The position numbers and the translations under genes are program-made. The notes beneath the pieces are model-generated. The model did not search any database. It saw nothing but the letters and a program-made list of their open reading frames with translations, and was not told where the DNA came from. A stretch of DNA of 64,000 bases. It comes from Ostrea edulis (Eukaryota). Positions 11,601 through 60,790 of the stretch are shown here, in pieces (the stretch's first letter is position 1; each line of letters begins with the position of its first letter). The stretch spans positions 53,010,001 to 53,074,000 of the forward strand of contig NC_079170.1 in the NCBI RefSeq assembly GCF_947568905.1, read 5' to 3'.

Positions 11601-14600
11601 GTAAATTTGTCTTGATAACAATTATCTGTCTACATATGAAAAAAGATTTATCAATGAATGAAGGTAACTCCATACTCTAATTATTATTTGATAAAAGCAC
11701 TAGTATAGAAGTGTATTTATTTCCATTGATAAGAGTTAGAATTAATAAATTATCAAATAAACAATATATAGGTCTTCTCACTTTTTAAGATGCGAGACAG
11801 GTATAAACAGAATCACATATCAACGTCAGAAAATTACAATTTTCCTTAAACAGCATAATCAATATTTCACAAAAACTGGTTATAACGATATAATAGTATC
11901 CATAACGATATCATAAAACTGTTTCTTTACAAACAATTACAAAATATCTGTGAAAAATAAAGGAAATACATGTACATCACATAATGGACTTTATAAACAA
12001 ATCAATGAAAACAGAGTTGGATTCAATATTTTGAAACGTATAACTGATTATTGATATTGAACTTAATTTTTTGAAATATTTGATATGTTTAAAGATCTTT
12101 TTACAATAACTATCGGAAAAGACCCCAAGAAAATAAATCCACGTTCCTTTCATGCATGAATCTAAATAACTTGATGATTTTACAAACTATTATGACGTCA
12201 CAGGAGGGTAGAACTGTTGAACTGTTGATCAACAGTCATAATGAGAAAGTATACAGATGCGTATTTGAAAGTAAATTTCAGCAACTTGAAACTCAATATC
12301 ATAATGAACATTACTTTAGATATGCTTGTACCTCACACGTTTTAGACTCCTCTTACGCCCAGTTAGACTTGCATATCAACCACAGAATACGATTATCTGC
12401 GTTTACTTCTTTAGCATATGTTGCATGCAGTTCTGTATCAGATGGTGTGTGATATAGTGAAGAACTGCATTTTAAATCCCTGTGAAGCTATGAAATACCT
12501 CAGTTCTCTAATAAAATTTCTTTTTCTCTATCATCTATTAAAAGAGTTTTCTGTAATACTATGAATTGTAGGGGAAACATGAAATACCTTTCGAATATCC
12601 ACTAGACTTGACTTTTCTGTGGTATTTGAATTTACATCTTTCCTTTTCCGACTTTTCCACATTAATTCCTCGGAGTACACATCTTTCTCCTGCAGATTGT
12701 TGATCATGCTGGCGATTTCCTCCTTCAGTTTCTGTTTCCTCAAAGGTATTTCATTTGCTTGTTTGTCAGTTGAAATCTTTTTCTTCCGTTCCTTGCCAAC
12801 TTCATTATTGGTATGTTCCTCATTAACATCAATCTCATTCAATTTCGACTTCCTTGATGCTAACCGAAAATACTGTGAAACAATAAAATGCTGTCAATCA
12901 ATAATGAAAATTCCAATGCAATACATAAATTTGTTTTGTAAATTCACAGCCATTAATATTACTGATATTACTAACTTTAATGGAAATTGGGATTGGGGCA
13001 CTTTCATTCAGACATGGTTGTTGTACTGTTGCCATGGATAACTCCTTTAGTTTGTTGGTATATGTGGATGTGGATGTGAGTGCTTGTGCTTTTGTTTACC
13101 TGCATGCGTTCATCTTTGTCTGACTTTAAGTATTCTGCGGGTAGTTTCCCTTCTCTGTCTCTGATATTTGATTTGACGCCCCTTTCGCAAAGTAGACTTG
13201 TGACTTCAAGACTGTTTTTTGCTTTTGCCACAACGTGAAACAAGCTTTCCCCCAATAAATTCACTTTCATGGGATTCAACATTGGAAAGCGACCCGGCTC
13301 CTTTTCATACATGTCTAAAAACTTTTTCAGTAGCGACATATTTCCTGAAAATAATTAAATTTAAACATAACTACAGTGTACCTAAGCGAGTATAGCAAAA
13401 TAAGTAGCACAAATACAAGCTTTAAATCCCACATCTTAATGGTTTATTTCAATACGTGTAAAGTATTATATGCAAAAACATGTTAGTCCATAGACGGTCA
13501 CATGGATACCTTTGTCTCTGTCTAATGCTATATACAGAGCTGCATGTATTGGTGTGTCTCCATCTTCTACACTGAGATATTCAGGATTCGCATTAAAATG
13601 AAACAATCGTTCTAGAACCCTAAAATGGTTGTTTTGTACGGCTATTTCAACTGCATCTTTTCCATCTACAACACAAATTGTGTGACCATGTACCCTTTTA
13701 ATTCAGTACAAAAGTATCAACGAATTATGATGATATACATTCTCCCATCCCCAATGACCTGTACTTTTTGAAAGAATCCCCATACAATGCATTTTTCCTC
13801 TGAATTTGACAAGAACTTCAAAATTAGATAACAAAATAGCAGCTCCCCGCCACTGTGTCTATTTCTATTAAACATAAGTATAAACGAAAGAATTCCTTGT
13901 CCAAATAAGTGTATGCACTCTATAGGTTTAGAGGAAAATATGCAATACTTAATAAATTCCTAAATTTGAGGAAGGACTGCATCGCGCTTTTTTATTACCT
14001 GAGTGTAATACAGCCCCACTGTAAAGCATATTTTCGACGATTTCCATCAGTAAGTTTTCACTTTTCTGAAGATTTTTACACTTTAGCACCTGTTCTACAG
14101 ATGATCCGGAAGCAAAATCATTTAGAGCGGACGCTTCGTGATGCTTTCGAAACTCGACAACAACCATGTGCATTTGTTTCCAATGTTCTTTCTCAGCAAG
14201 ACCACGTACGATTTTACCGTAAATCTTCCGATGCACCCTTGTCAGTTTTTCTGGAACATCTGTTTATAGAAACGAATCGGGAATTTCAATGATTAACCAA
14301 CAAAATACATGTAGTTACAACAATACACGACATAAACGAGTAATGAATACAACTAAATAATTACCCAGGTTCTCTTGAAGTCCAAAGGCATCTATAATGA
14401 GCTGAACTGCATCGTTTTCGAACTGTCTGTGCATATCTGATTTATGCTTGCTTTTATGAAAAATTTTCAACAAGCTGTAACAAGCAAGACGCGTTTCATT
14501 TGATATTAGTTTCGTCTTTGCATCTTTTAAATATTGTTTGCAATCTCTGAAACATTCTTGGTTGATGGCAGCAATTCTCTCTTCCTCTCTCCTAAAAAAA

Positions 14601-17600
14601 GAATACAAATTCTATAATGGATATTACTGCTGTGAATATTTTAAAGAAATTTTGCACATCTATGAAATCTGCAGAACATATTCTCTATTACATTTAATTT
14701 GAAAACATACTCGTTCGTCCTGATTTGTGTCAGAATGACGGTTTCACAAACTTTGACGTAATAAAAACATAGTCATAATACTATAAAAGTGATTATCTAC
14801 GCTGGGGGTTAAGTACGCGTTTTTCCACGTTCAGCATTACGCGTGGGGGAAAATACGCGGTTATTGAATATAATATATATCAAATATATATAACTATACG
14901 CGTTGGGGAAATCTACGCGCTTACTCGGTGGCTGTGTATACCTAATTAGCGTAAATTTCACCCACGTGTAAATAACTACTTTTACAGTATTGTAGATTGT
15001 TATGCTATGCAGACTTAACATTCGAAAGAGTTGTATTGCATTGTTTATTGGCTTTAAGCCTTATGGTTCATCAGCATATGACTGTCTAACAAAATAAAGT
15101 GTTTCATTTTTGTGCCTCGATGTACTTCAAAATGCACAACGCTGAACCGCAATTTCACCAAAGTAAATACTAGGATTATATTAGAAATTTACATTATGTT
15201 GACACAATTTTGCACAATGATTGAAGGAACAATTTCTGCATTGTTACAGGTATTCAAATAGTATTAGCTGTGAACTAGAGAGTGACAACTTTTGAGTCTA
15301 CCATACTTTAAAATCCTGAAATATGTCTAAAATGAAGTTCATTAGATATCAGTCAATAAAATGGCGGTCTCCCGTCAAACGTCGCGAAATTTTTATAACA
15401 TTTCTGCGCAATTTCCTTAAATTTTATAATGTTTCAGACATTATGTCGATAGAAGAAAAGAAATATGTTTTCTCAGAATTGCAACAAAAAAGATTGCAGG
15501 TTATCTAAATATTTTATTGTACATGTAGTAGTGGTTCCAGTGATGTACAGTTGTTAATATTCCGCAAACATGAATGATAGACAGCTTATGCTCAAGTACC
15601 AGTCTCTGAATGAGTCACTCAAGTTATGAATCATGCATAATTAGACAAGTCAGACCTTATTGACTTGAAAGTATTTACCCATTTCGCTATCAATATTAAT
15701 CTTAACCACACAATACCACTCTTATTTTCAAAAGTGAACTGTGCGACATTTATCTATGACACGGCAGTCAGAAGTTTTGCTGTCCTGTACAATAGTGAGA
15801 AGAACAAAAAAGGGTATGGTTGGGTCATTTTATCTGCATCCCATAACTAACAATACACTGATATAAACACAAACTTCAGAGATGAAACTCTATAGAAGAG
15901 TCGTTGAATTTTAGAATTACTAAATTCCTATCATAATCTTAATGATAAAATCCAACTTAGATATAAACTGTTACACTACATCTTTATAGAAAGGTATAGC
16001 CTATCCTAGTTGCAGAACTGTAGCTCTCTGAGAAAATATTGGGATATACCAGTGAGCTACAGATTCACCCTTGCAATTTACGGCACAGAAAAATCTGCGT
16101 ATGGTTGAGGCCTTCTTGCATTGCCGTCTCAAAAAAATTATTTAAAAATCTTATACATTATCTCGTTATAATTGTGTCCAAACCACCCTATTACATTCAT
16201 TAAAGTCCCATATAACCAGCAAAGTCACAGCTTCAAATTATTTCGTTTGTTGACGTAGCCATGTTAGGTGGACAGTCAATTCGAATCGGTTCCTTTTCTT
16301 ACTGAGCTAATAGCCTCAGCTATATTTTAGTTGAATAAATTGGATGAAATAATCTCAGTTCGGTTAAAACAATAATTGTTTGAATAAGTCTGAACAACTA
16401 AATCCACGACCTTCATTAGTCTGGTCCCCATTCCCGGCATATTGTCTAATAACCTCGTTATTGAAATGAATTGTAAGGGACCAGACTAAGCTTTCATGAT
16501 ATTTACAACACATAGGAGTTTATTTTACGTCTAGAGAAACTATACATGTTTTATTTATATTAATTATTCGCGTTTATGATAGATGGAAATCGAATAGATA
16601 CCTCGTATTCGATATTAGGTATAAATATAAATAGCAACGGGGTTCAAATTGACTGTCCACCAGTGACTGGTTATCTGTAGCTCTCTTGTTTGTCCCAATA
16701 TTTTCCCATAGAGCTACATATCTGCTACTAACTCTATCCAAGATTAAAAGTGTTTTAAGAAAATATCACACTGTAAATGGCAATCCTTATTATTTTTTTT
16801 TTTTACTTTTCATAAGCTCAGAGCTCAGGTTAATTTTGTATCTAAGCAAAGTTTGTATGTTTTTAATTACTATGCAAAAGGTGATGTCAAAGGACAGCAA
16901 TCAATGTCATAAATCCTACGATATACAAAATCGAGAACAAGGCAAATTAACACTAACTCCTGGAAACACCAGAGGTGGGATCAGGTGCCTATGAGGAGTA
17001 AACATCTCATGCATTGTGACCGACACAACAACATTGAGATAGCTGTCTTGGTCAGGTATAGAGTATTCGTAGTTAAATCATTATAATGACAAAATGGCCA
17101 AAATTTTGTTTGAGAAACATAACATTCGACCCAATGAATGGCTGTAATTCCAAACAATATTATTATGAAAACCATATATTTTGCGAAACATTGATGCAAA
17201 ACAATTCTATTGAAATCCCAGACCTTATTTCGCTAGTACCCTGCCTTACTTTAATATGATCATACGCAAAACATGCTCTCACGTATCGATTCAGAAGGGA
17301 CATGTGCAGGTGATAATGGAATATTGTTAGATTAATATAAAACAGGTTTGGAGTACAATTCCTATACAAGAAAAAAGATAGGAAAACTTCACAAATTTTT
17401 GATTCAACTTTTCGATAATGGTTTCAGATAATATTGGACTTTGGATACGATTAAAAGCCAAACACTGTATTATATTATTTCGAGATTTATGATATCGTTA
17501 ACTCTACATAACAAGCATGAGCATTTAGCCAGGAGCTGTCAGATATACATAAATTCTACCATATCATGAAAGGTGAGAATAACGAACAGTGATCAATCTT

Positions 17601-20464
17601 TTAATTCCTATAAGCAATACAAAATAGAGAGTTGGGCAAAAAAGGACCCCTGGACACACCAAAGGTGGGATCAGGTGCCTAGGAGGAGTAAACATTTCCT
17701 GTCGCCCGGTCACAACCGCCGCGAGCCCTATATCTTGATCAGGTAAACAGAGTTGTCCGCAGTCAAAATCAGTGTGCAAAGAACGGTCTAGTAATCGTAT
17801 GAAACACGTCAGACAACATTTGACCCAATGATAGGTTGTATTGGCAAACAAGATTGTTAAACGCCGATAGAATTTGCAAAATGCTGACATTAAACGAGAC
17901 TGTTGAAACCCTTGAACCATCAACTTGTTCGTCAGTAGTCTGCATCGATTTAAAAACTGACCAAACGCAGAACAACCTCTTGCGTATCGAATCAGTTGAG
18001 AGACCAACACCATATGCAGGTGATGATGGAATATTGCTACATAAATATGCATTTCCATATTTCTAAAGATTACTAATATATATGTAAGATGTGCGTGAAA
18101 TCTACACCTTGTCGTGTCCAGAGTTAAATGTGTTATCATTTGTACCATATTGCAATTAAAGTTTGTAGAGTCATTGTTCTTGGATGATATTTTATTGATT
18201 GTAAAGAAGGTATAAAACATAAATATACTGTATATAATTTATAATTCACCATTTCAGTAAATCATTGGAATCTTAGCGTTATTTGTACTCACAGTGCCAA
18301 ATAATTTTATGAGTTTGGCAAGCTCTTGGATATTTTCTTTAAAATTCAACAAAATTATGAATTAAGACACAAGAATCTTAAAGGATAATTTGTCATATAC
18401 ATGTACCTTATTCTTGTTTGTTCATAATGCTTTCTTTTCTCTTTCTCTCTTTGCTGTCGTAGTATTTGTTCCTGTTGTCGGTATTCTTGTTCTTTTTGTT
18501 TCATCTCACATTGTCGGTCAGTCTCTGGACCATGTACACAATTGAAAACATCATTAAAAGCATGATATATAAACAAGTGTAAAGAAAATAAATCTAAAAA
18601 GTATATAATAAATTTAAGATATCCCATGGTTTCTGGTTTGATATGATTTATATCCAGCAAGTTTTGTGTTTTCTATCCCCGAGCATTGGCGAGGAGATAG
18701 AAAACACACGAATTGGATAAAAATGATATCAAACCAGAAACCATGGGAGACTCTGTTGATCACATGTTACCCCTCCGGTTTTCCATTCACATTTTGTACT
18801 GTTTGACCTTCAAAGCCACATAACATTCAACAAAACTGTTACCATTAACAGGCATGTGTAGCTCCACTGTTAATTAATGTGTTTCGAAAGGCAGCATTAT
18901 TTTCATTGAATTGAAACTGAGTGGTGGATCCGATTTGTTGTGAAGCTGTTGATTTTGAAAGAAATGTCGAAATATTTGTGTGTGGAATTTCCTTTCAACT
19001 GCTGTAGCTGTTGATTGATTGGACATTTTTGTGACCAGTTAATTGCATAATTTGGTTTCATGTACATGTATGCTAGGTTCACTTTACTTTTAACTTAATG
19101 TTTGCAAGCACTGTGATTTTTTTAATATTTTGTCCCGAAGGATTCCCGCTGTAACTGTCATTCTTTTCGTGATGTACTCTAATCAATCTTTACAACAATA
19201 TTGTTGGAAATTATGCTCTCTTTGTTTGTAAACAAGCAATGTAAAATTTATGTACATTTGTGACGTCATAGGCGGCGTAGGAAAACAGTGTAATAATTAG
19301 AATACATGTAATGGGTGATATCCAATGGATAAAGAAGTAAACATGTGATAACTGCAGATAAATGAAAAAAACAGTCTGTTGAGTTTTTCTTTTTTTTCTT
19401 TTTGAAAATCAGAATCATAAATATTTATTTAACGGTTAAAATGTAAAGTACCATGTTTCTTGAGTAGCTTTGCGAGATGAGGCAATGCCTTTGGTGCATA
19501 TTTTGATGCAAGCTTTTTCTGCTTATTCAATAAAAGTGGATTGACACCAGCTTGCAGTAGTTGTTGTAGTACATCGTATTGTAATTCAGAATGGATACAT
19601 TTTGTCCTCTTGTCTACGGCAAGGTGAAGAACAGAATTTCCGTGGGCATCCTGGGTATCAAGTTCATTGTTTCTCATCGCTTGGTGAATGACATATTGAA
19701 ACAAGTCTAGGGTTCCTATTTGTAAAATACATATATAAATTTATTTGGTGCCAACTGAAAGTAGATACAAAGAAGCAAATAAATACATTACTGCCTTGCT
19801 CCTGTCAAAGCTGCAAGTATTATCTTCACAGACACAATATCAGTACATACATGTATACAATAAACACAGTGTAAGGTCACTTGTGGGTAGTGTCTGTTTT
19901 GCATGTTTCAGCGTGATCCCCCCCCCCCCCAATCTTTGTTTACTTAAGTAGCTACAAGTTGTATGCATTGGTTTATAGTGAGTGTCGTTAACAGATATGT
20001 TTGAGTGATATCTACCTAGTCCAATATCGGTGCACTGTTTATAAGTGTTGTGATTAATTACATACGACCAAAATCTTGTAGCAATTCAAAATATCATTTA
20101 AGTTTTTGTCAATACATGTATGTGTTTTGCAATACTAGGACCAGACATATTTCATAAACTACCCAGTATTTCTCTATGATATATGTATACGAGTTCAGTT
20201 AATACTACAATAGCCATAAAATGCGTTACAATCTACACAGTACGATATATGTATATGTTGGTGATGAGTACTTGTATTGTATTAGTTCTTACCACACATA
20301 CAGGGCCTGTTACACTTAGACTAAGATTTTTAAAAAAATGTAATTGTACATATATTAATCTTTGTTTGAGTTTCTAAAATTGTCCCCTGTTGACAGTGTA
20401 GTTACAGTTGACTTTGCGTTTGTCTATATTTCATTTAACTTTGATTTAATAACAGAGTATTTGG

Positions 20465-20512
<48 letters not shown>

Positions 20513-23502: not shown

Positions 23503-23545
<43 letters not shown>

Positions 23546-32500: not shown

Positions 32501-35413
32501 TGATCAATCTCATAACTCATATATAAGCCTCCTATAATATAAATTTTTGAAATGTAAAGATACAGCTATGCAATTCTTAAAGTTTGTTTGAATTGAAACC
32601 TGGAATTCTGCAAGTTACTACGCTTACTTTTTTCATCACAAGTTTATCGTTCAAATTCTCTAATGTATTATATGTGTATCAATAAAGTATCATGACCCTG
32701 TTGGCGTATACACTTTTCTAAATGCGCTAGTATACTATTCTGATTTGATTACGATTATTGGAATATTTCCTTTAGAATCCTACCTTCAACCACGTTTTGT
32801 CCATTTGGACTGCCCTCTTTGCGTCTTCCAATGCCTCGTTAAGACGATTCAATTCCGAATGAACCGTACATCTGTTTGTGTACAGAACTGCACTCTCTCT
32901 TTGAAGTTCGTCACATCTCGTTGATAACTTTATGGCCTTGGTATAATGTATTAGAGCATCGTCATATTTCTTTTCTGTCTTTGCTGTATTCCCTTTGTCC
33001 TTGATTTCAGCAATATGTTTTTTAACTATTTCTATATCAAAATAAAATAATTGCAGTTAACTTATATCGTATTCAAATACGAAGGAGATGAATAGCAAAT
33101 GAATAATCAGAAGCAGGTCATATGAGTGAAAATGATATCGATGAATGAATTTTATTCTGTTTTATCACATATGCTATTTTCTTCTCTCAAAGAAACAAAC
33201 CCGTGTCCATGAACATTCTGGATAAGGAATAGTAGCACTTGTCTTCTGCTTCACAAAAATCAATGGGCAGATTTCCGGTATTGTCAAAAATGAAGGAGTT
33301 GCAGCCATTATTTAAGCAAAGCAATAATAAGGGATTTCTTTCGTCTTCACTACAAGATCTAAACGAAGCAATGATGTGGAGTACACAGCGGCCATACTGG
33401 TCCACAGTGTTCTTTTTCTCCTGAGTGTTCAAATACTTTCTGAACAGGAATTTCACAAGTGCGTCCACTCCTATAAAAGATTTCGTTTTGATATTTCAAG
33501 TCGAGCATACTTTTTTGTCATTTCAAATGAACTTCTTCACGATAATATGATTACAATATACTGTACCTGTTTCCAGGGTCTTAATCGACACCACGTGCAG
33601 CACTGGAATTCCCCATTTTCTTTCAATATCTTGGATCGGTGCCCCATTTTTTATCAGAGCTAAAGCAAGATCCATGCCGTATCTTTTCAGGTCCTTAGTG
33701 GAAAGATCTTGCAGTAGAGACCCCACAGATAATTTCGTGGCGGAGCAGTTGGGTGTAGAGAAGTCCAAAGAACTACGTGGCCCTGCATGTTCCCCGGTGA
33801 CTAGCAGACTTACTCCTTCCCAGCATTGTCGGTTGGCCAGTTGTTGAAGGAGCAATTCCTGAACTTCAGGAGAACCCGGATTTAGTTCTTGGTGTTCCTC
33901 CAAGAGCCTGTCACAGTCGCCTGCAGCAACACAAATTTTATATTCTAATCTATCATTCCCATTCAGGTATTCTAGTGTTATTTCTATGACTCAATATAGA
34001 TTTCGTCGTAATGGCATAATATTTTTCACAATGTGTTTACATGTGTATAAAGCAAACTTTTTAACGCAATGCATTCATGTCATAAAGTAAAGGTTCCTAA
34101 AGGACTAATATTTGGTGCACTTCTAATATTTGCCTCTTTCATGTTATAAAGACAACCATAGTTCTATATAGTTCGTTATCATCGCCTTACATACTATATA
34201 GATCGATTGTATCTTGTTTAACGTCCTTGAAAAATTCTCGAGAGGGACGTTAAATAAGATACAATCAATCTATATAGTATGGAAGGCGAGGATAACGAAC
34301 AGAGATCATTGTCATAACTCCTATAAGCAATACAAAATAGAGAATTGGGCAAACATGGATTCTTGAATACCGGTATATCAGAGGTGAGATCAGGTGCCTA
34401 GGAGAAGTAAGCATCCCCTGTCAACCGGTCACATCCGCTGTGAGCCATATCTCTTGATCAGATAAACGGAGTTATCCGTAGTCAAAATCAGTGTGCCAAG
34501 AACGGCCATGTTATGGCACATTTGATCGTCTCGGCATGTTTGGTCGCCGGCGACCATTCGTGCAGCATGTATCGTCGCCGGGCGACCGAACGTGTCATAA
34601 GGGTGGACACGAATGGTCGTCAATTTTAGACCATATCCAAGCACGAATGGTCGCCGTCCAAGCCCTTTATCCCAAACCCTAACTTTGCTTTTCTCCTCCC
34701 TCTCCTCTTCCAACAGCACCTTTTCCCCTTCATTCTCTTTTATTCCTTCTAATACTCCTCCTCCTTTTCCAAATTCTTCATTTTCTTCTGAACGAGTCAT
34801 TCGAATGGTGGGTAAGAGTTAAGGGAGATATGGCGCTGCCTGATAGCCTTCTATGAGCAATCAGATGCTATTGGACGTTCCCCATAAAAATCACAACACA
34901 ATGTATTCCTATTTGAAACGGCTAATCAAACCTTCGAGGTGTTTGAAGTGTGCAGAGAATAGACTTATTCTCTCGATCTCGCCCTCTCTCTCTCTCCAAC
35001 TTTCTTTCGCTCTCCCGCTCGCTTTCTCTCACTTTCTCTCGCTCGCCCCCTCTCGCCCGCCCGTTCTCTCTCGCTCGCCCCTCCCTCTCTGTCGCCCTCT
35101 CCCTTGTCCTTGCCCCCCTCTCTCTCTCTTTCTCTCTCCCTCCCTCTATCCCTGTTCCTCTCTCATGCCCTCTCCCTCTCTTTTGTCCTCTCTCTTTCTA
35201 TTGCCCCCACCCTCTCTCTCGCCCCCTTCCTCTCTCTCTTTCTCTTGCCCTCTCTCTCTCCATCTCTTTTGCCTTCGCCCACCTCTCTCTCTCTCTCTCT
35301 CTCTCTATCTCCCTTCCTCTATCCCTGTCCCTCTCTCGTGCCCTCTCCCTCTCTTTTGTCCTCTCTCCATCTCGCCCTCTTCCTCTCTCTCTTGTCATCA
35401 CCCTCTTGCTCTC

Positions 35414-35466
<53 letters not shown>

Positions 35467-38400
35467 CTCTCTCTATCTCGACCACTCTCTCTATCTCTCT
35501 CTCGCCCTCTCTTTTGCTCTCTTGCCCTCGCCCTCATCCTTGCTTTCGCCCTCGCCCACGCTTTCTTGCCCTCTAACTCTCTCTCTCTCTTGCCCACCCT
35601 CTTTCTCGCCCTCTTCCTCTCTCTCTCTCTTCCTCCCCATTCTCTCTTTCCTCATCTCTCTCTTCCCCTCTCCCTCCCTTTATCCTACCCTCTCTCTTTC
35701 CCTCTCTCCCTACCTCCCCCTCCCTCTCCCCCCCCTCTCTCTCTGTCCCTTGCCATATCCCTCTCTCGCGCCCTCTCCCTCTCTCGCGCCCTCTCTCGCC
35801 CTCTTCCTCTCTTTCGCCCTCTTCCCCTCTCTCTTGCCCTCTCCCTTGCTTTTGCCCTCGCCCTCTCCCTTGCTTTTGCCCTCTCTCTCCCTCGCCCTGT
35901 CGCCCACCCTCTTTATCTCTAGATATTTAATAAAATCAATAAGATGTCTCATAATTTAAAGTTTATAAGATATCTTATGAATATATAAGATAAATGCAAA
36001 TACATTTTGTATGTATCTTTTAAACTATATAAATATCTAATAAACTTTATTATATATCTTGTATATGAAACAAAATATCTTATCAATTTTATGAGATATC
36101 TTGTAAAAGATAGAATATATTCATTTTTTTATAAGATATCTTATAAAACACAAACGATATCTGATATATTTTATAAGATATTTCATAAATCAATTTTTAT
36201 ATAAGATACATGTACATGTATCTCATACACTTTATGAGATATCTTATGATATATACAAGATATCTAATAAGCTTTACAAAATATCTTAATATGAAGTTTA
36301 TAAATTCATTTATGAGATATCTTATAAAATATATAAGATATTATAAAGTTTATGAGATATTATATTTAGCATATAAGATATCATATGTTTTATAAGATGT
36401 CTTATAGAATATATGAGATATCTTATAAACTTTCTTCATATCTTATAGAAGTTATAAGATATCTTGTAAAGGTTATAGAATAACTTATAAAGTGTATAAG
36501 ATATCTTAAATCAAAAACATTAAAAAGATATCTTCTAAACGTTATGAGAGATGTTATATACTATATAAGATATCACATATATTTTTAAGATTTTATAAGA
36601 TATCTTATAACTTTTCAAATTAATGAGATATTTTTAAAGAGGAATAAATGCAAAATTGACGTGTCATAATGATAGTGGTATGTAAGAGCATTGTATATTT
36701 ACATTGTAAGATGTTGTCACTCGTATGTTTGCAAAAAAAAAATTCACATCAAATTCCATTCAGAAATACCCATGCTTTTGGTTCTTTGCTTTGTATCCTG
36801 CTTGACTTGTGTCATAAATGTGTGCATACAATACAAACACATGAATGCAAAAACGAAGATGGGGGTTGGGATAGGGGGCTTGGGTGCCGACTATTCGTGC
36901 TCAGGTATGGCCTAAATTTGACGACCATTCATGTCCACCCTCAAGGCACATTCAGTGCAGCATGATTTGTCGCAGGCGACGAAACGTGTAACACGAATGG
37001 TCGTCGGCGACCAAACGTACCGTACGCATCGTCGCCGGGCGACTGAACGTGCCAAGGCGACCAAACTTGCCGTAACGCGGCCTAACAATCGGTATGAAAC
37101 ACGTCAGATAGCATTTGACCCAACGATAGGTTGTATTGGCAAACTAGATCGTTATAACGACCATAGAATTTGCGAAATGCTGGCTTTAACGAGACTGTTG
37201 AAATCCCTACACCATCAACTTATTTGTTTAGTAGCCTGACTCGATTTAAAAACTGATCATACGCAAAACAAGTCCTTGCGTATCGAATCAGTTGAGAGAT
37301 ATAAACATCATATGCAGGTGTTAATGGAATATCGCTATATAAATATGGGAAGTTGACAATGAAGAAGCTGAAATCACCACGTTTGTCAAGTTCAGTTGTT
37401 AGTTTTTCGTTAATAGACGTATCTCCATGTACCTTTGTATGTTTATGTGTAATATCCAATACATGTACTTGTGTTTATCAAGACTAGATTTTCAATCACA
37501 TTTCCTTCTTCTGATCATGTCTTGTAGGCGACAGAATATAGCCACTCGCCCACATAATCCTTTATTACACGGGGTGGAGAGGGGTGTCACTTTAAAGGTA
37601 CGTGTAAAATTATGAAGAAATTACAAATGTGTTTCTATACCTTGTAGTCTTCGAAGGTCAGTGACTGTGATGATGATTTCCGCTAGAAATTGTATTGTTG
37701 TGTTTTGATCATAATGAGGCACCGGTAGTGTGATGTTGTATCCTTGTATCAGCACACCAAGTGCGTCATAAAAAAGATTGAGTCCTTTGTAGGCAGTTGC
37801 TGCACGCCAGTAGCCCTGTGTTATAATAAAATCATAATGAATTATGTGCTAAATTAGCATTTGAAATATTGTAAATTAATAAATAAATAAAAATGAAAAC
37901 GAGCATGAGCTGTCAACTACATGTAGAACGTAAAATCTTTAATTCTGAACCAAGATTAATATGCTTGAATGCGTTAAGAAATGGGGGGAGGGGGGATACG
38001 AGGGTTAAAAAAAAAAGGTTACATCTAATTTTATGAAAATTATGTAAAATGTAAGCGCAATGAATGATTTACTTTCATACAATGTTTCTACCATTGTGTC
38101 TATAGAAACAAAAGGAATTCAAATTTCAAAATCACCACAGATTGGAAGATGTATGATTTCTGATATCAGTGGTAATTTGTATGTGATGTGAAGCTGTTCA
38201 GTCATTCTGATATCAGTGGTAATTTGTATGTGATGTAAAGCTGTTCAGTCATTCTGATATCAGTGGTAATTTGTATGTGATGTGAAGCTGTTCAGTCATT
38301 CTGATATCAGTGGTAATTTGTATGTTATGTGAAGCTGTTCAGTCATTCTGATATCAGTGGTAATTTGTATGTGATGTGAACCTTTTCAGTCATTCTGATA

Positions 38401-40950: not shown

Positions 40951-41008
<58 letters not shown>

Positions 41009-41315
41009 TGCTAGTGAGTTTTTTTTATCTTAATTATGTTTTATATATGCATTCATGGAATTTCACCTTAGCCCAGTAAGGAACAATTTCCATGCACTGT
41101 CCAGCATCCGTCAAAGCTAACTCAAAGTTACCCATTTTACTAAACACCAGCGAACGGTTGCTGAGAATTTTCGGCACTTCATCCTGTAGAATAGGGGCGT
41201 TCAGGTTACAATGGGCCAGTGCACCGTTATACAAATTGAGAGCTTCGGACAGGCTACCCCTCAGGAGGTTTTCTTCCGCGTTATCCTTGTACCACTGAAG
41301 CTGCATCCTGGCCAT
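2486..41315 (-). CDS. TRANK1: TRANK1/LBA1-like TPR + ankyrin + UvrD-like (SF1) helicase; 26 coding exons in window, 3' part beyond position 1
   Basis: Hand-spliced exons (GT-AG, one GC-AG) join in frame to 6825 nt. Repeated TPR and ANK motifs are followed by SF1 motifs LLLGRSGTGKTTCCIYRLW (I), RQLFITKN (Ia), YVDETQD (II), FLTGDTAQ (III), YQLTHNYRS (IV) and LTIYESKGLEFD (V). The order and wording match TRANK1 as I recall it; orthology versus paralogy is untested. Confidence 0.9.
3504..3649. repeat. solo hairpin: 65-bp inverted arms with 16-nt spacer
   Basis: ttacacagtcagtttggtacataatacgg...tattggg mirrored by cccaata...ccgtattatgtgccaaactgaccgtgtaa. Confidence 0.85.
3885..4665 (+). mobile_element. 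Penelope-like (Naiad-type) RT fragment, decayed
   Basis: KTYFVQYHLDST...KMLEYL...MGTNCVPLL...FRYIEDVLSINN...VTFPYSCSNI...SQPIRYARAC, with stops and frameshifts. Confidence 0.8.
6269..6438 (-). CDS. TRANK1: exon 25 (motif IV)
   Basis: tcacag|IYQLTHNYRSHAGIL...GPAPILLEIQDR S|gtatgt; phase 0 to 2. Confidence 0.92.
6549..6798 (-). CDS. TRANK1: exon 24 (motifs II and III)
   Basis: tttcag|...IYVDETQDFTQAE...FLTGDTAQGIMRGISFRF...IPNK|gcaaac (GC donor inferred); phase 2 to 0. Confidence 0.88.
6907..7373 (-). CDS. TRANK1: exon 23 (acidic insert + helicase 1B region)
   Basis: atttag|ENIPGW...HPSLIWMEIMSFIKGS...FDETDVVRNIFN R|gttatc; phase 0 to 2. Confidence 0.9.
7903..8068 (-). mobile_element. Naiad-like PLE 3' end (plus an inverted 3'-end fragment at 7839-7874)
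   Basis: catgaaaggtgaag...accagaggtgggatcaggtg...gaccggtcaca motif shared with the other copies. Confidence 0.8.
8131..8426 (-). CDS. TRANK1: exon 22 (helicase motif Ia)
   Basis: caccag|DEEEDEEV...RQLFITKNLVLC...FPLFTTSRKLLLMIDASL...GNIL|gtaaat; phase 1 to 0. Confidence 0.92.
8998..9262 (-). mobile_element. Naiad-like PLE 3' fragment
   Basis: same 3' motif plus acccaatgataggttgtattggca (RT C-terminus YNLSLG). Confidence 0.8.
9397..10210 (-). CDS. TRANK1: exon 21 (pre-helicase domain + Walker A)
   Basis: ttttag|IKPGFFENQEWEIECT...GRSGTGKT (9482-9505)...LNLQ G|gtaaaa; phase 0 to 1. Confidence 0.95.
10395..10463 (-). CDS. TRANK1: exon 20 (69-bp linker exon)
   Basis: catcaag|GPRNVLEIQNTVESANEGETDFQ|gtaagt; phase 0 to 0, so it could be skipped in frame. 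Confidence 0.65.
10565..10827 (-). mobile_element. SINE-family copy (shares central and 3' domains with 28185 and 43110)
   Basis: gtggcacgataaagatcc, cttcaccggca and gacgttaaacaa tail; variant head gggttagaataggtcctcag, also seen at ~2425-2458. Confidence 0.65.
12588..12872 (-). CDS. TRANK1: exon 19 (charged linker)
   Basis: tcacag|YFRLASRKSK...LVDIRK|gtattt; phase 0 to 0. Confidence 0.8.
13100..13344 (-). CDS. TRANK1: exon 18 (ankyrin)
   Basis: tttcag|...NLLGESLFHVVA...RDREGKLPAEYL...RMQ|gtaaac; phase 1 to 0. Confidence 0.9.
13510..13665 (-). CDS. TRANK1: exon 17 (ankyrin)
   Basis: ttgtag|DGKDAVEIAVQNNHFRVLERL...DGDTPIHAALYIALDRDK G|gtatcc; phase 1 to 1; not in ORF track. Confidence 0.9.
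13999..14259 (-). CDS. TRANK1: exon 16 (module 4 linker)
   Basis: aaacag|...IVRGLAEKEHWKQM...GAVLHS G|gtaata; phase 1 to 1. Confidence 0.85.
14365..14591 (-). CDS. TRANK1: exon 15 (helical, degenerate module 4)
   Basis: ttttag|REEERIAAINQECF...FGLQENL G|gtaatt; phase 2 to 1. Confidence 0.85.
14781..14987. mobile_element. Tc1/mariner-type MITE
   Basis: TA|ctataaaagtgattatctac ... gtaaataactacttttacag|TA. Confidence 0.7.
15030..15080 (-). mobile_element. LINE (L2/CR1-like) 3' tail fragment; second copy at ~52810-52862 (+)
   Basis: atgctgatgaaccataaggcttaaagccaataaacaatgcaatacaa; GGC-TTAAA-GCC stem-loop followed by (CAATA)n. Confidence 0.55.
16007..16730. mobile_element. non-autonomous TIR element whose ~57-bp TIRs are themselves hairpins
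   Basis: left tagttgcagaactgtagctctctgagaaaatattgggatataccagtgagctacagat matches the reverse complement of the right end; a nested 72-bp TIR element tagtctggtccc...gggaccagacta lies at 16417-16488. Confidence 0.75.
16879..17420 (-). mobile_element. Naiad-like PLE fragment (diverged subfamily)
   Basis: accagaggtgggatcaggtgcct; LLNRYVRACFAYD-type RT C-terminal remnant. Confidence 0.7.
17564..18064 (-). mobile_element. Naiad-like PLE, RT C-terminus + 3' UTR
   Basis: SQLIRYARGCSAFGQFLNRCRLLTNKLMVQGFQQSRLMSAF...YNLSLGQMLSDVFHT followed by the shared 3' motif. Confidence 0.85.
18407..18524 (-). CDS. TRANK1: exon 14 (charged coiled-coil linker)
   Basis: gtccag|ETDRQCEMKQKEQEYRQQEQILRQQREKEKRKHYEQTRI R|gtacat; phase 1 to 2, which is needed to join exon 13 to exon 15; weak polypyrimidine tract. 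Confidence 0.7.
18622..19350 (-). mobile_element. Crypton-like (tyrosine recombinase) element remnant
   Basis: minus-strand QIMQLTGHKNVQSINSYS (19001-19054) matches the YR C-terminal H...Y motif; terminal hairpin at 18622-18748; far boundary approximate. Confidence 0.65.
19452..19715 (-). CDS. TRANK1: exon 13 (module 3 ankyrin)
   Basis: aaatag|...DAHGNSVLHLAV...NKQKKLASKY...KKH G|gtactt; phase 1 to 1. Confidence 0.9.
20468..20511. repeat. (TA)n microsatellite
   Basis: about 22 TA units. Confidence 0.95.
20518..24644. mobile_element. Kolobok-type foldback element, ~4.1 kb, ~1-kb imperfect inverted arms
   Basis: TTAA|agctgacatgaattaa ... ttaattcatgtcagct|TTAA; inverted homology traced from 20518-21530 to 23480-24644; no transposase recognised. 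Confidence 0.75.
25591..25790 (+). pseudogene. Tc1-like transposase N-terminal HTH remnant
   Basis: MGRKRSELSI*V*EIVWKLLEGKTIRYVSDLLNIPKSTIVDIK*RF...NSVEN. Confidence 0.65.
26195..26509 (-). CDS. TRANK1: exon 12 (module 3 linker + ankyrin)
   Basis: taacag|...TVYRLIEKNEWIPA...GESFLHACIRLTLAT G|gtatgt; phase 1 to 1. Confidence 0.9.
27671..27827 (-). CDS. TRANK1: exon 11 (module 3 TPR exon B)
   Basis: gtttag|AQMRIGKAYAGLEKHKAALSRFRRA...KCG G|gtatgg; phase 0 to 1. Confidence 0.85.
27910..28068 (+). mobile_element. Naiad-like PLE 3' end
   Basis: ggcgggtgtgaccggtcgacagg...cctaggcacctgatcccacctctgg...gagattgatcac. Confidence 0.85.
28185..28525 (-). mobile_element. tRNA-derived SINE, near full length
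   Basis: head gtggtctagacg (A box), gtttgaatc (B box), central gtggcacgctaaagaaccc, tail gacgttaaacaagaca(caat)n. Confidence 0.8.
28660..29195 (+). mobile_element. Naiad-like PLE, RT C-terminus + 3' UTR
   Basis: IVNFPKLCSNISLSPVYCVYVSQLI remnant followed by the shared 3' motif. Confidence 0.8.
29369..29817 (-). CDS. TRANK1: exon 10 (module 3 charged linker + TPR exon A)
   Basis: ttgcag|...FQREGDRIFKEGRFKAALVSFENA...LFCNIADCYLHLEQY...SYQ|gtaggt; phase 1 to 0. Confidence 0.9.
30158..30418 (-). CDS. TRANK1: exon 9 (module 2 ankyrin)
   Basis: ttgaag|...DGNGNSPLHSVV...RDRFGKLAVQYV...RRE G|gtaaga; phase 1 to 1. Confidence 0.9.
30969..31196 (-). CDS. TRANK1: exon 8 (module 2 ankyrin)
   Basis: aatcag|...EDDTPLHAAARLAVIT G|gtatgt; phase 1 to 1. 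Confidence 0.9.
31325..31462 (-). CDS. TRANK1: exon 7 (module 2 linker)
   Basis: aaacag|DAEKAERYEALQTVSNDVWPDVLHRLSKQAEWISIKELVWGTGEGT G|gtattt; phase 1 to 1. Confidence 0.85.
31604..31757 (-). CDS. TRANK1: exon 6 (module 2 TPR exon B)
   Basis: gtatag|GHWRLSQLLRKTRQYNKAVEIAVRG...LPYMS G|gtaagt; phase 0 to 1. Confidence 0.9.
32150..32432 (-). mobile_element. decayed SINE copy
   Basis: tRNA-like head remnant (cagttcgatttcaggtcgtgac) and gacgtccc tail. Confidence 0.5.
32784..33031 (-). CDS. TRANK1: exon 5 (module 2 TPR exon A)
   Basis: gatatag|EIVKKHIAEIKDKGNTAKTEKKYDDALIHYTKAI...LYTNRC...ALEDAKRAVQMDKTWLK|gtagga; phase 1 to 0; not in ORF track. Confidence 0.9.
33201..33470 (-). CDS. TRANK1: exon 4 (module 1 ankyrin)
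   Basis: ttatag|...DQYGRCVLHIIA...DNTGNLPIDF...MDT G|gtttgt; phase 1 to 1. Confidence 0.9.
33567..33920 (-). CDS. TRANK1: exon 3 (module 1 linker + ankyrin)
   Basis: ctgcag|...LLQQLANRQCWEGV...GIPVLHVVSIKTLET G|gtacag; phase 1 to 1. Confidence 0.9.
34960..35925. repeat. ~0.95-kb polypyrimidine/polypurine (CT-rich) tract
   Basis: (CT)n interspersed with ctcgccct and ctctccct variants. Confidence 0.95.
35925..36640. repeat. AT-rich degenerate array of tataagatatcttat(a)-type palindromic units
   Basis: recurring ataagatatcttat and gagatatctt. Confidence 0.85.
37641..37815 (-). CDS. TRANK1: exon 2 (module 1 TPR exon B)
   Basis: acacag|GYWRAATAYKGLNLFYDALGVLIQG...LRRLQ G|gtatag; phase 0 to 1; not in ORF track. 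Confidence 0.9.
38159..38541. repeat. 47-bp minisatellite, about 8 copies
   Basis: tctgatatcagtggtaatttgtatgtgatgtgaagctgttcagtcat; period 38159 to 38206. Confidence 0.95.
38629..39135. mobile_element. Kolobok-type MITE, ~150-bp TIRs
   Basis: ATAA|agggacatagacacgatttgag ... ctcaaccgtgtacatgccctt|TTAA; internal cacaattctt / aagaattgtgag mirror. Confidence 0.7.
39472..39846. repeat. 29-bp minisatellite, about 13 near-identical copies
   Basis: atgactattgatactcacgaatctcctaa. Confidence 0.95.
40953..41004. repeat. (CT)n microsatellite ~60 bp downstream of the exon 1 donor
   Basis: about 26 units. Confidence 0.95.
41067..41315 (-). CDS. TRANK1: exon 1 (module 1 TPR exon A)
   Basis: MARMQLQWYKDNAEE...LSNRSLVFSKMGNFELALTDAGQCMEIVPYWAK; donor AAG|gtgaaa, phase 0; in-frame phase-1 acceptor actgtag| at 41323. 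Confidence 0.85.
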
Positions 41316-41837
41316 GTGTGCCACTACAGTAACAACATGATATCATAAAGTGAGAATTCAATAATCATACATAAGTATGCATGTAGATAATTCCATTGTT
41401 ATTTATTACAATTGTTTTGATTGGACAAAGACAAATTTAAATGAGAATTTACCCATCACTAAATCCAAAAACGCCATGTAAACATACACGCCTGAAAACA
41501 AATGACATAGTGCGGGGAAACTATTCAAATTATTGAAATTGATAATACAGGGAACGAATTAGAATTATAAGAATCAAACATTCATTTTGAAGAATTTATC
41601 GATGTGTAAACACTGGACATTTTACTCACTTTTATTCAGTTTGAGAAAACATGCCAATCTTATAGAAAATTCACGACCAAAATTCATTTCTGTGGCATGT
41701 TTACGTAATTATTACTTTTTTTTTTTTTTAACACTTATAGTACTTCTTGTCATTCAGGAAACGATGTAATATTTTAAAACAAACGAAACGGGTAGTTGCT
41801 CACGTCAGTTTCCGTCTTTGCACATGCCCTGGGCTGC

Positions 41838-59555: not shown

Positions 59556-60602
59556 AATTGTGATGTCAATTAAGTCCCAATTTTCATATCTTTTTCACTT
59601 ATCATGCAAAATTGTTCAAAGTTTCTTTTTCTATAATGCTAGGCAAATTGTGATATTATGATCATTGGGAATAGTTTATGAAATCATCAAGGCAAAATTT
59701 TCAATCTCAAAATACTATTATTTCTTAACATGCCGTAAAGTTTTAATTTTGCATTTGACATGTAATTTCACCGCAGCACCTACAGATAAAATTATATGAA
59801 AACTGTATTTTTAAAAAATATATCCATAAAAAATGCTGCAATAAGTTGGTGGGTTTTTTTTTTGTTTTTTTTCTTCAAAAAAGATGTTTTCAATGAAATA
59901 TATAGTGAATTTGTTTTGTAATGAGGTGGCCCATTGCACTGGTAGCCCCCAATCACCGCGTCCAGGGAATAAACATCTTGACAATTATGTGCATTGCACT
60001 TAATCACCAGGCATCTTGAATAAAGATGAATAGTTTTCTAGAAAAATTCTAACAAGGTAATTCTTTTCCAAAAAATGAAGACATAGAATATTGATTTTGC
60101 GTAGCATAAAATGTTCGTTATATTTTCTTTTATTTGCAGGACACTCTAACTCAATTTAATTATTCAAGGTAATTAGAGTGAATTTAAACCTCTGTCAGTA
60201 ATTCTAAAATACATTCGTTATTCAATTTAATGATAATCTTTTCATTAATGTCCGTTGACAATGGTTAGGACATGTACATGTAACTCGTACATGTTCTAAA
60301 TTCGCAAATTATTTAGAGTAGATTTGCGACTTGCAATATCAATTCACAATAAGAATTGATAAATAGTAAACAAAATAGAAAGAAAAAATCACTTTGTCAT
60401 TTCATTTATACCATACGTATAGATATGTACATATATTAAAGTTTTACATTATACGGCTTTAGAATATGGAGGAAAAAACGGTCGTATGTATGTAATCTAT
60501 TTAATTCCTTTTAATTATCGCTTTCTAATTATCTTTTATAAATAGAAAAGTACATGTAATATATAATGTCAAGTAATCATGCTGCACTTTCACTTTGTAT
60601 GA

Positions 60603-60790
60603 CATGAAAGGTGAAGGTGAACAGTGATCAATCTCATACTTCCTATAAGCAATACAAAATAGAAAGTTGGGCAAACACGGACCCCTGGACGTACCAGAGG
60701 TGGGAGCAAGTGCCAAGGAGGAGTAAGCATCCCCTGTCGACCTGTCACATCCGCCGTGAGTCCTATATCTTGATCAGGTAAACGGAGCCA
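60603..60790 (-). mobile_element. Naiad-like PLE 3' end
   Basis: shared 3' motif. Confidence 0.85.

What the first reader, a model, noticed from the sequence alone, without database searches (positions are those of the whole stretch)
13100..41323. TRANK1-like N-terminus built from a tandemly reiterated, phase-symmetric TPR-ANK exon cassette (3 clear copies + 1 degenerate)
Seen in sequence: three four-exon blocks share the intron phase series 1-0-1-1-1 (exons 1-4, 5-9, 10-13). Each has a TPR pair split at W.K|G.W (WAK|GYW, WLK|GHW, SYQ|AQM). Each has a linker motif L..L....W (LLQQLANRQCW, VLHRLSKQAEW, TVYRLIEKNEW; fourth copy IVRGLAEKEHW). Each has an ankyrin pair split at the same G codon (VLHVV..LETG|, PLHAA..VITG|, FLHAC..LATG|, PIHAA..DKG|). 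About 1776 aa precede Walker A. Known: vertebrate TRANK1 is annotated, as I recall, with a single TPR region and an ANK region before the helicase; phase 1-1 modules are the classic substrate of exon shuffling. Inference: this is a lineage-specific multiplication of a sensor/scaffold cassette on an SF1 helicase. Whole cassettes could be skipped or vary in copy number without frameshift, giving a combinatorial, receptor-like protein, possibly in innate immunity.
Basis: partly seen in the sequence, partly recalled or inferred. Interest (0 to 1): 0.75.

Follow-up and report, generated by a model that had tools for sequence, protein, structure and literature searches.

The report
TRANK1 gene with repeated TPR-ankyrin cassettes
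The region holds the front half of a bivalve TRANK1 gene, built from four tandem copies of one 340-residue TPR-plus-ankyrin module; this layout is real but shared with other molluscs, so it is an ordinary old feature of the family.

Summary
Observation confirmed. Window 41323-13100 (minus strand) carries 17 coding exons of a TRANK1-family gene, in four tandem cassettes (TPR exon, TPR exon, linker/ankyrin exon, ankyrin exon). All quoted motifs are present. Intron phases run 1|0-1-1-1|0-1-1-1-1|0-1-1-1|1-1-1.

- RNA contigs confirm seven junctions and join cassettes 1-3 in one transcript. No cassette-skipping joint was seen.
- In an all-against-all exon comparison, the 12 best of 136 pairs are all positionally equivalent exons.
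- A 348-column cassette profile places the introns at the same columns in every copy: 76 (phase 0), about 127 (phase 1), 266 (phase 1).

Interpretation partly supported. The array is not special to this lineage.
- Sinanodonta (bivalve) and Haliotis and Bulinus (gastropods) have the same three full plus one partial cassette. Haliotis has identical intron phases.
- Deuterostomes have one full plus one partial cassette. Nematostella multiplied its cassettes independently.
- The fourth, "degenerate" copy is an ancient bilaterian-wide type that lacks the first TPR exon.
- The three intron positions are shared from cnidarians to vertebrates.

An orthologous cassette folds as one confident all-helical unit (pLDDT 95, pTM 0.89). 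Combinatorial skipping and a receptor role remain speculation. The gene is a new member of a known family, of modest interest.

The parts
41067..41323 (-). E1, cassette 1, first TPR exon (profile columns 5-76). Acceptor at 41323, first in-frame ATG at 41315, donor after 41067 (phase 0).
   Evidence: Pfam TPR_2 E=0.0013. The 5' end and start codon are unresolved.
37641..37815 (-). E2, cassette 1, second TPR exon (columns 77-126). Starts GYW. Phase 0 in, 1 out.
   Evidence: Junctions are predicted and supported by homology. The length of an RNA contig upstream of E3 fits E2+E1.
33567..33920 (-). E3, cassette 1, linker (LLQQLANRQCW) plus first ankyrin part (columns 137-259). Phase 1-1.
   Evidence: RNA contigs 33566-33922.. 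Best hit is Sinanodonta cassette 1.
33201..33470 (-). E4, cassette 1, last ankyrin exon (columns 271-346). Phase 1-1.
   Evidence: RNA joint 33469|33566. Donor 33201 predicted, RNA joint approximate..
32784..33031 (-). E5, cassette 2, first TPR exon (columns 3-76). Phase 1 in, 0 out.
   Evidence: Pfam TPR_1 7.5e-11. RNA joint 32783|31756..
31604..31757 (-). E6, cassette 2, second TPR exon (columns 77-123). Starts GHW.
   Evidence: RNA joints..
31325..31462 (-). E7, cassette 2, linker exon (VLHRLSKQAEW; columns 129-171). Followed by an extra phase-1 intron.
   Evidence: RNA joints 31604|31462 and 31325|31196. The same extra intron is in the C6 paralogue.
30969..31196 (-). E8, cassette 2, first ankyrin part (columns 177-264). 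Ends ..PLHAAARLAVIT|G.
   Evidence: RNA joints..
30158..30418 (-). E9, cassette 2, last ankyrin exon (columns 289-344). Phase 1-1.
   Evidence: RNA joints 30968|30417 and 30158|29817. Similar to E17 (z 13) and E13 (z 10).
29369..29817 (-). E10, cassette 3. A low-complexity acidic/lysine-rich lead-in, then the first TPR exon (columns 5-67). Phase 1 in, 0 out.
   Evidence: RNA contig pieces 29368-29817..
27671..27827 (-). E11, cassette 3, second TPR exon (columns 79-125). Starts AQM.
   Evidence: Best splice pair (score 11.2)..
26195..26509 (-). E12, cassette 3, linker (TVYRLIEKNEW) plus first ankyrin part (columns 145-265).
   Evidence: Best hit is cassette 3 of Sinanodonta and of Haliotis.
19452..19715 (-). 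E13, cassette 3, last ankyrin exon (columns 269-340). Follows a 6.5-kb intron.
   Evidence: Acceptor 19715 chosen by homology over a better-scoring AG at 19613. Pfam Ank 0.0015.
14365..14586 (-). E14, cassette 4 (partial type), TPR remnant (columns 75-126). This cassette has no equivalent of the first TPR exon.
   Evidence: The E13-E14 junction is the least certain, and a small exon may be missing.
13999..14259 (-). E15, cassette 4, linker (IVRGLAEKEHW; columns 136-209).
13510..13665 (-). E16, cassette 4, first ankyrin part (columns 219-265). Ends ..PIHAALYIALDRDK|G.
   Evidence: Pfam Ank_4 1.4e-5..
13100..13344 (-). E17, cassette 4, last ankyrin exon (columns 268-346). Phase 1 in, 0 out.
   Evidence: 72% identical to residues 1-64 of Saccostrea TRANK1-like P0002..
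12534..12872 (-). E18, charged linker exon between the cassette array and the helicase. The 3' end was not determined.
   Evidence: Aligns to P0002 residues 64-155. Acceptor 12872.
9383..10210 (-). Exon with Walker A (LLLGRSGTGKTT), the start of the SF1/UvrD-like helicase. Further helicase exons lie at 8466-2474 and beyond the window start.
   Evidence: UvrD-helicase E=2e-4 on 6516-6851 and UvrD_C E=0.0077 on 2474-2860.

Best explanation

The N-terminus is four tandem copies of one ancient module of about 340 residues. Each module has about 3.5 TPR repeats, a helical linker with the L..L....W motif, and about three ankyrin repeats. Three copies are full. The fourth, next to the helicase, is a partial type that lacks the first TPR exon.

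Each full copy is encoded by a block of four exons (five in cassette 2). The introns sit at fixed positions: profile column 76 (phase 0), about 127 (phase 1) and 266 (phase 1). Phase-1 introns flank each block.

Shown: the full cassette was already a symmetric 1-1 exon set in early bilaterians. All four cassettes are one-to-one orthologous between this bivalve, a unionid mussel and an abalone. So the array formed before the bivalve-gastropod split.

Inferred: the array arose by tandem duplication of that exon block through unequal crossing-over in introns, most likely in the spiralian stem.

Inferred function: each cassette is a rigid alpha-solenoid that acts as a protein- or ligand-binding platform. 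Four in a row form an extended scaffold that recruits partners to, or regulates, the C-terminal UvrD-like SF1 ATPase. By analogy with vertebrate TRANK1, which is interferon- and IRF7-induced, this may act in nucleic-acid or antiviral surveillance.
For: Gene and family:
- The Walker-A exon finds 389 relatives. All 20 that were looked up are TRANK1, TRANK1-like, UvrD-domain or unnamed proteins of animals.

Exon model:
- The frames are open and the phases follow the stated series.
- RNA contigs confirm seven junctions. One 1873-nt contig spans E5-E10 and a 1119-nt contig spans E3-E4(-E5).

Repeat:
- The 12 best of 136 exon pairs are positional equivalents.
- The eight cassettes of Sinanodonta and Haliotis align over their full length.
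- The cassette profile matches each copy at 1e-60 to 1e-97.
- Window exon ends fall at the same profile columns in all copies.

Age:
- 27 of 34 exon best hits fall in the positionally equivalent cassette of Sinanodonta or Haliotis.
- In the tree, C1 is supported at 100/97, C3 at 97/95 and the partial type at 98/93. The three Nematostella copies group together at 100/99.
- Haliotis phases are 1|0 1 1 1|0 1 1 1|0 1 1 1|1 1.
- The three intron positions are shared with Callorhinchus, Antedon and Nematostella.
- Copy numbers: molluscs 3 full + 1 partial; deuterostomes 1 + 1.
- A paralogue on C6 has the same exon layout.

Fold:
- AlphaFold2 model of Sinanodonta cassette 1: pLDDT 94.9, pTM 0.89, all helical.
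- The PDB holds only generic TPR matches, TM 0.3-0.4.

Function lead:
- TRANK1 is IRF7-regulated in chicken (PMC4505898).
- It is induced by poly(I:C) in crocodile cells (PMC5702629).
- In Aplysia it is co-expressed with SAMD9 and DTX3L (PMC8195618).
Against: - RNA evidence covers only E3-E10 directly. Contig lengths suggest E1-E2 and about 550 nt downstream of E10. The junctions E11 to E18 and the link to the helicase rest on splice prediction and collinearity with predicted proteins of other species.
- The start codon and a probable 5' exon are unresolved. The E13-E14 junction is weak.
- The grouping of all spiralian full cassettes is weakly supported (58/66). An ancestral bilaterian array with losses in deuterostomes is therefore not excluded.
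- The fold was predicted for an orthologue's cassette, not for the window's own protein.
- No experiment bears on function in any mollusc. The scaffold and antiviral roles are inferences.
Confidence: 0.85

Rival explanations
1. A lineage-specific multiplication gives a combinatorial, receptor-like protein, in which whole cassettes are skipped by alternative splicing or vary in copy number between individuals.
For: Cassettes 2 and 3 are phase 1-1 and multiples of three (1029 and 1185 nt), so skipping would keep the frame. Cassette number and type differ between phyla and between paralogues. For example, a locus on C7 at 41.9 Mb has three cassettes without the first TPR exon, and the scallop protein has two partial types.
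Against: The same four cassettes, one-to-one, occur in Sinanodonta and Haliotis. The copies are only about 20-25% identical to each other, so they are old. No skipping joint appears in four RNA runs; only constitutive joints were seen. The variation seen is between genes and phyla, not between transcripts or individuals.
Confidence: 0.07
2. The array of three full plus one partial cassette is ancestral to Bilateria or older. Deuterostomes lost two full cassettes, rather than spiralians gaining two.
For: The backbone among the full-cassette groups is unresolved. The spiralian-only grouping has support of just 58/66. A nemertean cassette groups with C3; an annelid cassette groups with C2 only in the quick tree, so the split between C1/C2 and C3 is old.
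Against: In the best tree all spiralian full cassettes lie on one side of a branch. Sponge, lamprey, shark, amphioxus, hemichordate and crinoid each have a single full cassette. This reading would need repeated or early loss. Nematostella's copies are independent and use phase-0 boundaries.
Confidence: 0.25
3. The blocks are not one gene. The TPR-ankyrin array and the helicase are separate neighbouring genes fused by homology-guided modelling.
For: No RNA contig examined here crosses from cassette 4 into the helicase exons. Only window 29000-34200 could be laid.
Against: One contig joins cassettes 2-3 and another joins cassettes 1-2. The Saccostrea protein P0002 runs from E17 through E18 into the Walker-A exon. 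The Haliotis, Sinanodonta, Nematostella, Antedon and Callorhinchus models are collinear single genes.
Confidence: 0.04
4. The resemblance is only the generic likeness of any TPR to any TPR and any ankyrin repeat to any other, not a duplicated cassette.
For: Pfam finds only weak, generic TPR and Ank matches exon by exon. The TPR exons are the ones that sometimes hit the wrong cassette.
Against: The non-repeat linker exons also match each other (E7~E12, E3~E7). The order of parts and the three intron positions and phases are the same in each copy. The full-length cassette profile scores 1e-60 to 1e-97.
Confidence: 0.01

Closest known systems
Mollusc TRANK1-like proteins: Haliotis asinina XP_067665651.1 (3833 aa) and Sinanodonta woodiana KAL3888629.1 (3569 aa)
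   Same: They have the same three full plus one partial cassette in the same order, followed by the UvrD-like helicase. Haliotis has the same intron positions and phases.
   Different: They are about 25-45% identical per exon. The window gene has two extra introns (E7|E8 and E15|E16) and an intron after E17 that Haliotis lacks. Haliotis has a 27-aa first coding exon that was not located in the window.
Vertebrate TRANK1 (Callorhinchus milii XP_007902239.1; turtle XP_074844285.1)
   Same: It belongs to the same family. It has the same full cassette type and the same helicase-proximal partial cassette, with introns at profile columns 76 (phase 0), about 124 (phase 1) and 266 (phase 1). The helicase is UvrD-like.
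   Different: It has only one full cassette, so about 800 rather than about 1750 residues precede the helicase. It has additional introns inside the cassette.
Nematostella vectensis TRANK1 (XP_048589124.1)
   Same: It has several copies of the same cassette before the helicase, and the same internal intron positions.
   Different: Its copies group with each other (100/99) and are bounded by phase-0 introns. They include extra copies of the TPR exon alone, and two copies lack the last ankyrin part. This is an independent multiplication.
Symmetric (class 1-1) exon modules of exon shuffling and intragenic duplication (general knowledge, e.g. EGF or Ig modules of extracellular proteins)
   Same: Both flanking introns are in phase 1, the module length is a multiple of three, and the module folds as one unit.
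   Different: The module spans four exons with internal introns. It is intracellular-type solenoid repeats. It was found only inside TRANK1-family loci of this genome, not shuffled into other genes.

Membership tests
[quoted passage not shown] | Closest named relatives are TRANK1 or TRANK1-like proteins | tested here: met
   The Walker-A exon search returned Saccostrea, Mizuhopecten, Haliotis, Nematostella, Callorhinchus and other TRANK1(-like) proteins.
[quoted passage not shown] | N-terminal TPR repeats | tested here: met
   Pfam TPR_1 7.5e-11 and TPR_2 3e-8 on E5, both above the curated cut-offs. Matches on E1, E10 and E11 are weaker.
[quoted passage not shown] | Ankyrin repeats between the TPRs and the helicase | tested here: met
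   Ank_4 1.4e-5 on E16 (25.7 bits, cut-off 22.7). Other exons score below cut-off because introns split the repeats. The cassette profile covers all four ankyrin parts.
[quoted passage not shown] | SF1 UvrD-like helicase core (Walker A, DExx, UvrD_C) | tested here: inconclusive
   GRSGTGKT is present at 9383-10210 and DETQD in the 6516-6851 exon. UvrD-helicase scores 21.6 bits against a cut-off of 23, and UvrD_C has E=0.0077, each on single exons. The orthologues pass (Sinanodonta 31.4 bits, Haliotis UvrD_C 34.5 bits). The spliced protein was not scanned, and the gene's 3' end lies outside the window.
Symmetric 1-1 exon cassette (duplicable or skippable module) | Same intron phase on both sides and length divisible by three | tested here: met
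   Cassette 2 is 1029 nt and cassette 3 is 1185 nt, each flanked by phase-1 introns. The flanks of cassette 2 are seen in RNA.
Symmetric 1-1 exon cassette (duplicable or skippable module) | Module is an autonomous folding unit | tested here: met
   The AlphaFold2 model of the orthologous Sinanodonta cassette 1 has pLDDT 94.9 and pTM 0.89. This is a prediction on an orthologue, not an experiment.
Alternatively spliced cassette array (combinatorial isoforms) | Transcripts that join non-adjacent cassettes | tested here: not met
   Only constitutive joints were seen in four RNA runs over 29000-34200. Contigs drop rare variants, so this is weak negative evidence.
Alternatively spliced cassette array (combinatorial isoforms) | Copy-number variation of cassettes among individuals | not tested

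The most novel reading that the evidence does not exclude
The mollusc TRANK1 cassette array is a modular recognition platform in which each cassette binds a different partner or pathogen-derived ligand. Its composition is varied, by rare cassette-skipping isoforms, by copy-number differences between individuals, or by paralogues with different cassette sets. This would tune an invertebrate antiviral helicase in a way comparable to variable repeat receptors.
Probability: 0.06. Interest if true: 0.7.

Novelty: new member of a known kind. Interest (0 to 1): 0.3.

Why it matters
TRANK1 is a very large protein conserved from sponges to humans. It is induced by interferon and IRF7, and no biochemical function is known for it.

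This work shows that its N-terminus is made of a defined, confidently folding TPR-linker-ankyrin unit of about 340 residues. The unit has fixed intron positions, and its copy number differs by phylum: 1+1 in deuterostomes, 3+1 in molluscs, and an independent expansion in a cnidarian.

That gives a natural unit for domain dissection and for binding assays. It is also a clean example of intragenic duplication of a symmetric multi-exon block.

For this window itself the result is ordinary. It is a correctly recognised TRANK1 orthologue whose architecture is shared with proteins already in the databases.

Tried and rejected
- Pfam exon by exon gave mostly sub-threshold TPR and Ank hits, because introns split the repeats. 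It was replaced by a purpose-built cassette profile.
- I first set the E1 start at 41323 as a codon start, which gave stops. It was corrected to the ATG at 41315. Position 41323 is an acceptor.
- The search for a 5' coding exon upstream of 41342 gave only unconvincing candidates.
- The best-scoring acceptor for E13 (19613) was rejected, because it would delete the conserved GN..LH ankyrin motif.
- The look-up of encoding contigs had no record for Nematostella isoform X2, and the Sinanodonta gene range was too long to return DNA.
- Foldseek against the PDB found only generic TPR superhelices and no TPR-ankyrin composite.
- The bacterial promoter/terminator scan is irrelevant to a eukaryotic gene and is ignored.
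- The inverted-repeat search between the two high-depth intron spots found nothing.
- Four literature searches found no description of the cassette architecture.
- The scan's own notes held nothing on TRANK1.
- The joined (spliced) protein was never built or searched. Exons were used one by one by reference, and the fold was done on an orthologue's cassette.

Full report
**What is there.** The window is AT-rich eukaryotic DNA (GC about 0.34). Downstream, at lower coordinates, an exon at 10210-9383 holds a Walker A motif (LLLGRSGTGKTT). Further exons hold DETQD and UvrD-like C-terminal motifs.

A full HMMER search with the Walker-A exon found 389 relatives. All 20 that I looked up are TRANK1, TRANK1-like, UvrD-domain or unnamed proteins of animals. 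They include:
- Saccostrea cucullata (61% identical, the nearest);
- Mizuhopecten, Pinctada, Sinanodonta, Haliotis, Bulinus and Littorina;
- Tubulanus, Owenia, Antedon, Patiria, Ptychodera and Branchiostoma;
- Petromyzon, Callorhinchus and a turtle;
- Nematostella and the sponge Oscarella.

The gene is therefore a TRANK1-family member of a bivalve.

**Exon model.** I paired donors and acceptors under the constraint of open frames and checked them against RNA. Only one read-laying run of at most 6 kb was allowed, so I laid four RNA or probable-RNA runs on 29000-34200.

Contigs of two runs that match the window with 0-1 differences, and of two runs about 3-5% diverged, give these GT..AG joints on the minus strand:
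- 33567|33470
- 32784|31757
- 31604|31462
- 31325|31196
- 30969|30418
- 30158|29817
- an imprecise joint at about 33201|33031

One 1873-nt contig runs from E5 through E10 and 547 nt further. One 1119-nt contig runs through E3 and E4 into E5, with 427 nt upstream, which fits E2 plus E1. Cassettes 1, 2 and 3 are thus in one transcript. No joint between non-adjacent cassettes appeared.

The resulting model has 17 exons from 41323 to 13100, with these phases:
- 1 | 0 1 1 1 (E1-E4)
- | 0 1 1 1 1 (E5-E9)
- | 0 1 1 1 (E10-E13)
- | 1 1 1 (E14-E17), then phase 0

Cassette 2 is 1029 nt and cassette 3 is 1185 nt. Position 41323 is a splice acceptor, and the first in-frame ATG is at 41315. Haliotis and Antedon have a short first coding exon followed by a phase-1 intron. 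A 5' exon is therefore probably missing from the model; I could not find it. Junctions from E11 onward are predictions supported by homology. E13-E14 is the weakest.

**Is the repeat real?** I compared all 17 exon translations pairwise, using Smith-Waterman scores against 300 shuffles each. The 12 best of 136 pairs are all positionally equivalent exons:

| Pair | z |
|---|---|
| E9~E17 | 13 |
| E9~E13 | 10 |
| E1~E5 | 9 |
| E4~E17 | 8.7 |
| E2~E6 | 7.8 |
| E8~E16 | 6 |

The next six are E8~E12, E4~E13, E7~E12, E4~E9, E3~E7 and E12~E16. The linker exons, which are neither TPR nor ankyrin, match too. This rules out mere generic repeat likeness.

The eight cassettes of the Sinanodonta and Haliotis proteins align over their whole length. 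A 348-column profile built from them and iterated matches each cassette at 1e-60 to 1e-97. On that profile the window's exon ends fall at the same columns in every copy:
- column 76|77, phase 0;
- about column 127, phase 1;
- about column 266, phase 1, in the Gly codon.

There are two copy-specific extra introns: E7|E8 near column 174 and E15|E16 near column 212.

**How old is it?** Each window exon finds its positional counterpart in Sinanodonta and Haliotis. In a score table, 27 of 34 best hits fall in the equivalent cassette. The exceptions are mostly in the generic TPR exons; two (E7 and E9 against Haliotis) are a linker and an ankyrin exon.

Copy counts with the profile:

| Taxon | Cassettes |
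|---|---|
| Haliotis, Sinanodonta, Bulinus | 3 full + 1 partial |
| Tubulanus | at least 2 full + 1 partial |
| Callorhinchus, turtle, Branchiostoma, Ptychodera, Antedon | 1 full + 1 partial |
| Oscarella, Petromyzon | 1 full |
| Nematostella | 3 cassettes plus extra copies of the TPR exon |

Maximum-likelihood trees of cassettes give these groups:
- All bilaterian partial cassettes form one clade (98/93).
- C1 of Haliotis and Sinanodonta group together (100/97).
- C3 of four molluscs group together (97/95), with the nemertean copy as sister.
- C2 forms two pairs (84/80 and 85/96).
- The three Nematostella copies group together (100/99).
- All spiralian full cassettes lie on one side of a branch, but with weak support (58/66).

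I also mapped four proteins exactly onto their genomic loci.
- Haliotis has phases 1|0 1 1 1|0 1 1 1|0 1 1 1|1 1, the same as the window.
- The three internal intron positions and phases recur in both cassettes of Callorhinchus and of Antedon, and in the Nematostella cassettes.
- Cassette boundaries are phase 1 in bilaterians but phase 0 in Nematostella.

The conclusions are:
1. The exon structure of the cassette predates Bilateria.
2. The full cassette was already a symmetric 1-1 block.
3. Molluscs, and probably spiralians, triplicated it before bivalves and gastropods split.
4. Cnidarians multiplied theirs separately.

The fourth, "degenerate" copy is a distinct, old and well-conserved type that lacks the first TPR exon.

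**Within this genome.** The genome is 895 Mb, and the window is C7:53010001-53074000. A paralogue at C6:71740170-71782557 has the same exon layout, including the extra intron in cassette 2. A locus at C7:41935303-41949733 has three cassettes without the first TPR exon. Cassette composition thus varies between paralogues. No cassette-specific match was found outside TRANK1-like loci. The other hits are generic ankyrin or TPR genes.

**Fold and function.** Exons were searched one by one by reference.

The fold was predicted for the orthologous Sinanodonta cassette 1 (P0070:30-363), using a 32-row cassette alignment. The model has pLDDT 94.9 and pTM 0.89. It is all helical: seven TPR-type helices, linker helices, then ankyrin-type helix pairs. 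The high pTM means that the TPR and ankyrin halves have a defined mutual orientation. Foldseek against the PDB gives only generic TPR superhelices at TM 0.3-0.4, so no solved structure covers the composite unit.

The functional evidence is indirect:
- TRANK1 is IRF7-dependent after poly(I:C) in chicken cells, and that paper states that little is known of its function (PMC4505898).
- It is strongly induced by a viral mimic in crocodile cells (PMC5702629).
- In Aplysia it sits in a co-expression module with SAMD9 and DTX3L (PMC8195618).

My reading is that the array is a scaffold of four rigid solenoid modules serving the C-terminal SF1 ATPase, possibly in antiviral surveillance. This is an inference.

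The inference of a lineage-specific multiplication holds only at the level of molluscs or spiralians against deuterostomes. The idea of combinatorial skipping has no support in the data I could reach.

Four literature searches found no description of this cassette architecture. The proteins themselves are already in public databases as TRANK1-like predictions.

**Verdict.** This is a real, well-defined feature of an ordinary TRANK1 orthologue. It is a new member of a known kind, of modest interest (0.3).

I did not examine it.

Noticed in passing
window 62223-63917 (-): A 564-aa ORF is the tail of a non-LTR retrotransposon ORF2 (Pfam RVT_1 3e-5 and zf-RVT 8e-7).
   Followed up: partly
window 34850-35960: A CT/GA-rich low-complexity block (GC 0.48, GC skew -0.47) lies inside the E2-E3 intron. 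It gives long spurious ORFs on both strands, such as a 368-aa 'SLSLSL' ORF.
   Followed up: no
window about 29000-29173 and 32476-32653: Contig depth here is 12,000-40,000 in runs X4 and X6, against about 10 on the exons, with many loose ends and odd joints. These are copies of a very abundant interspersed repeat in two introns. No inverted repeat of 30 nt or more lies between them.
   Followed up: partly
window 7814-8059, 17567-18238, 27913-28173, 28969-29286, 34265-34414, 60590-60820 and others: A recurring peptide-like motif (GRQGMFTPPRHLIPPLV.PGV.VCP.LYFVLLIG) appears in both orientations in introns and flanks. It marks a dispersed repeat family of unknown type.
   Followed up: no
G000:C6:71740170-71782557 (+), loci L005-L009: A paralogous TRANK1-like gene has the same cassette exon layout, three full plus one partial, including the extra intron in cassette 2.
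   Followed up: partly
G000:C7:41935303-41949733 (+), loci L010-L012; also C7:42141378-42148331 (-): Further TRANK1-like cassette arrays on the window's own chromosome. The first has three cassettes, all without the first TPR exon. One matching segment contained stop codons in the genome search.
   Followed up: partly
L003 (Nematostella vectensis TRANK1 locus): The 77-aa first TPR exon (profile columns 1-76, phase 0-0) is itself repeated several times on its own in the sea anemone gene. This is a different duplication unit from the mollusc one.
   Followed up: partly
The stretch lies inside the Walker-A exon of the TRANK1 gene and is conserved in TRANK1 relatives. The fold claim was not examined.
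   Followed up: no
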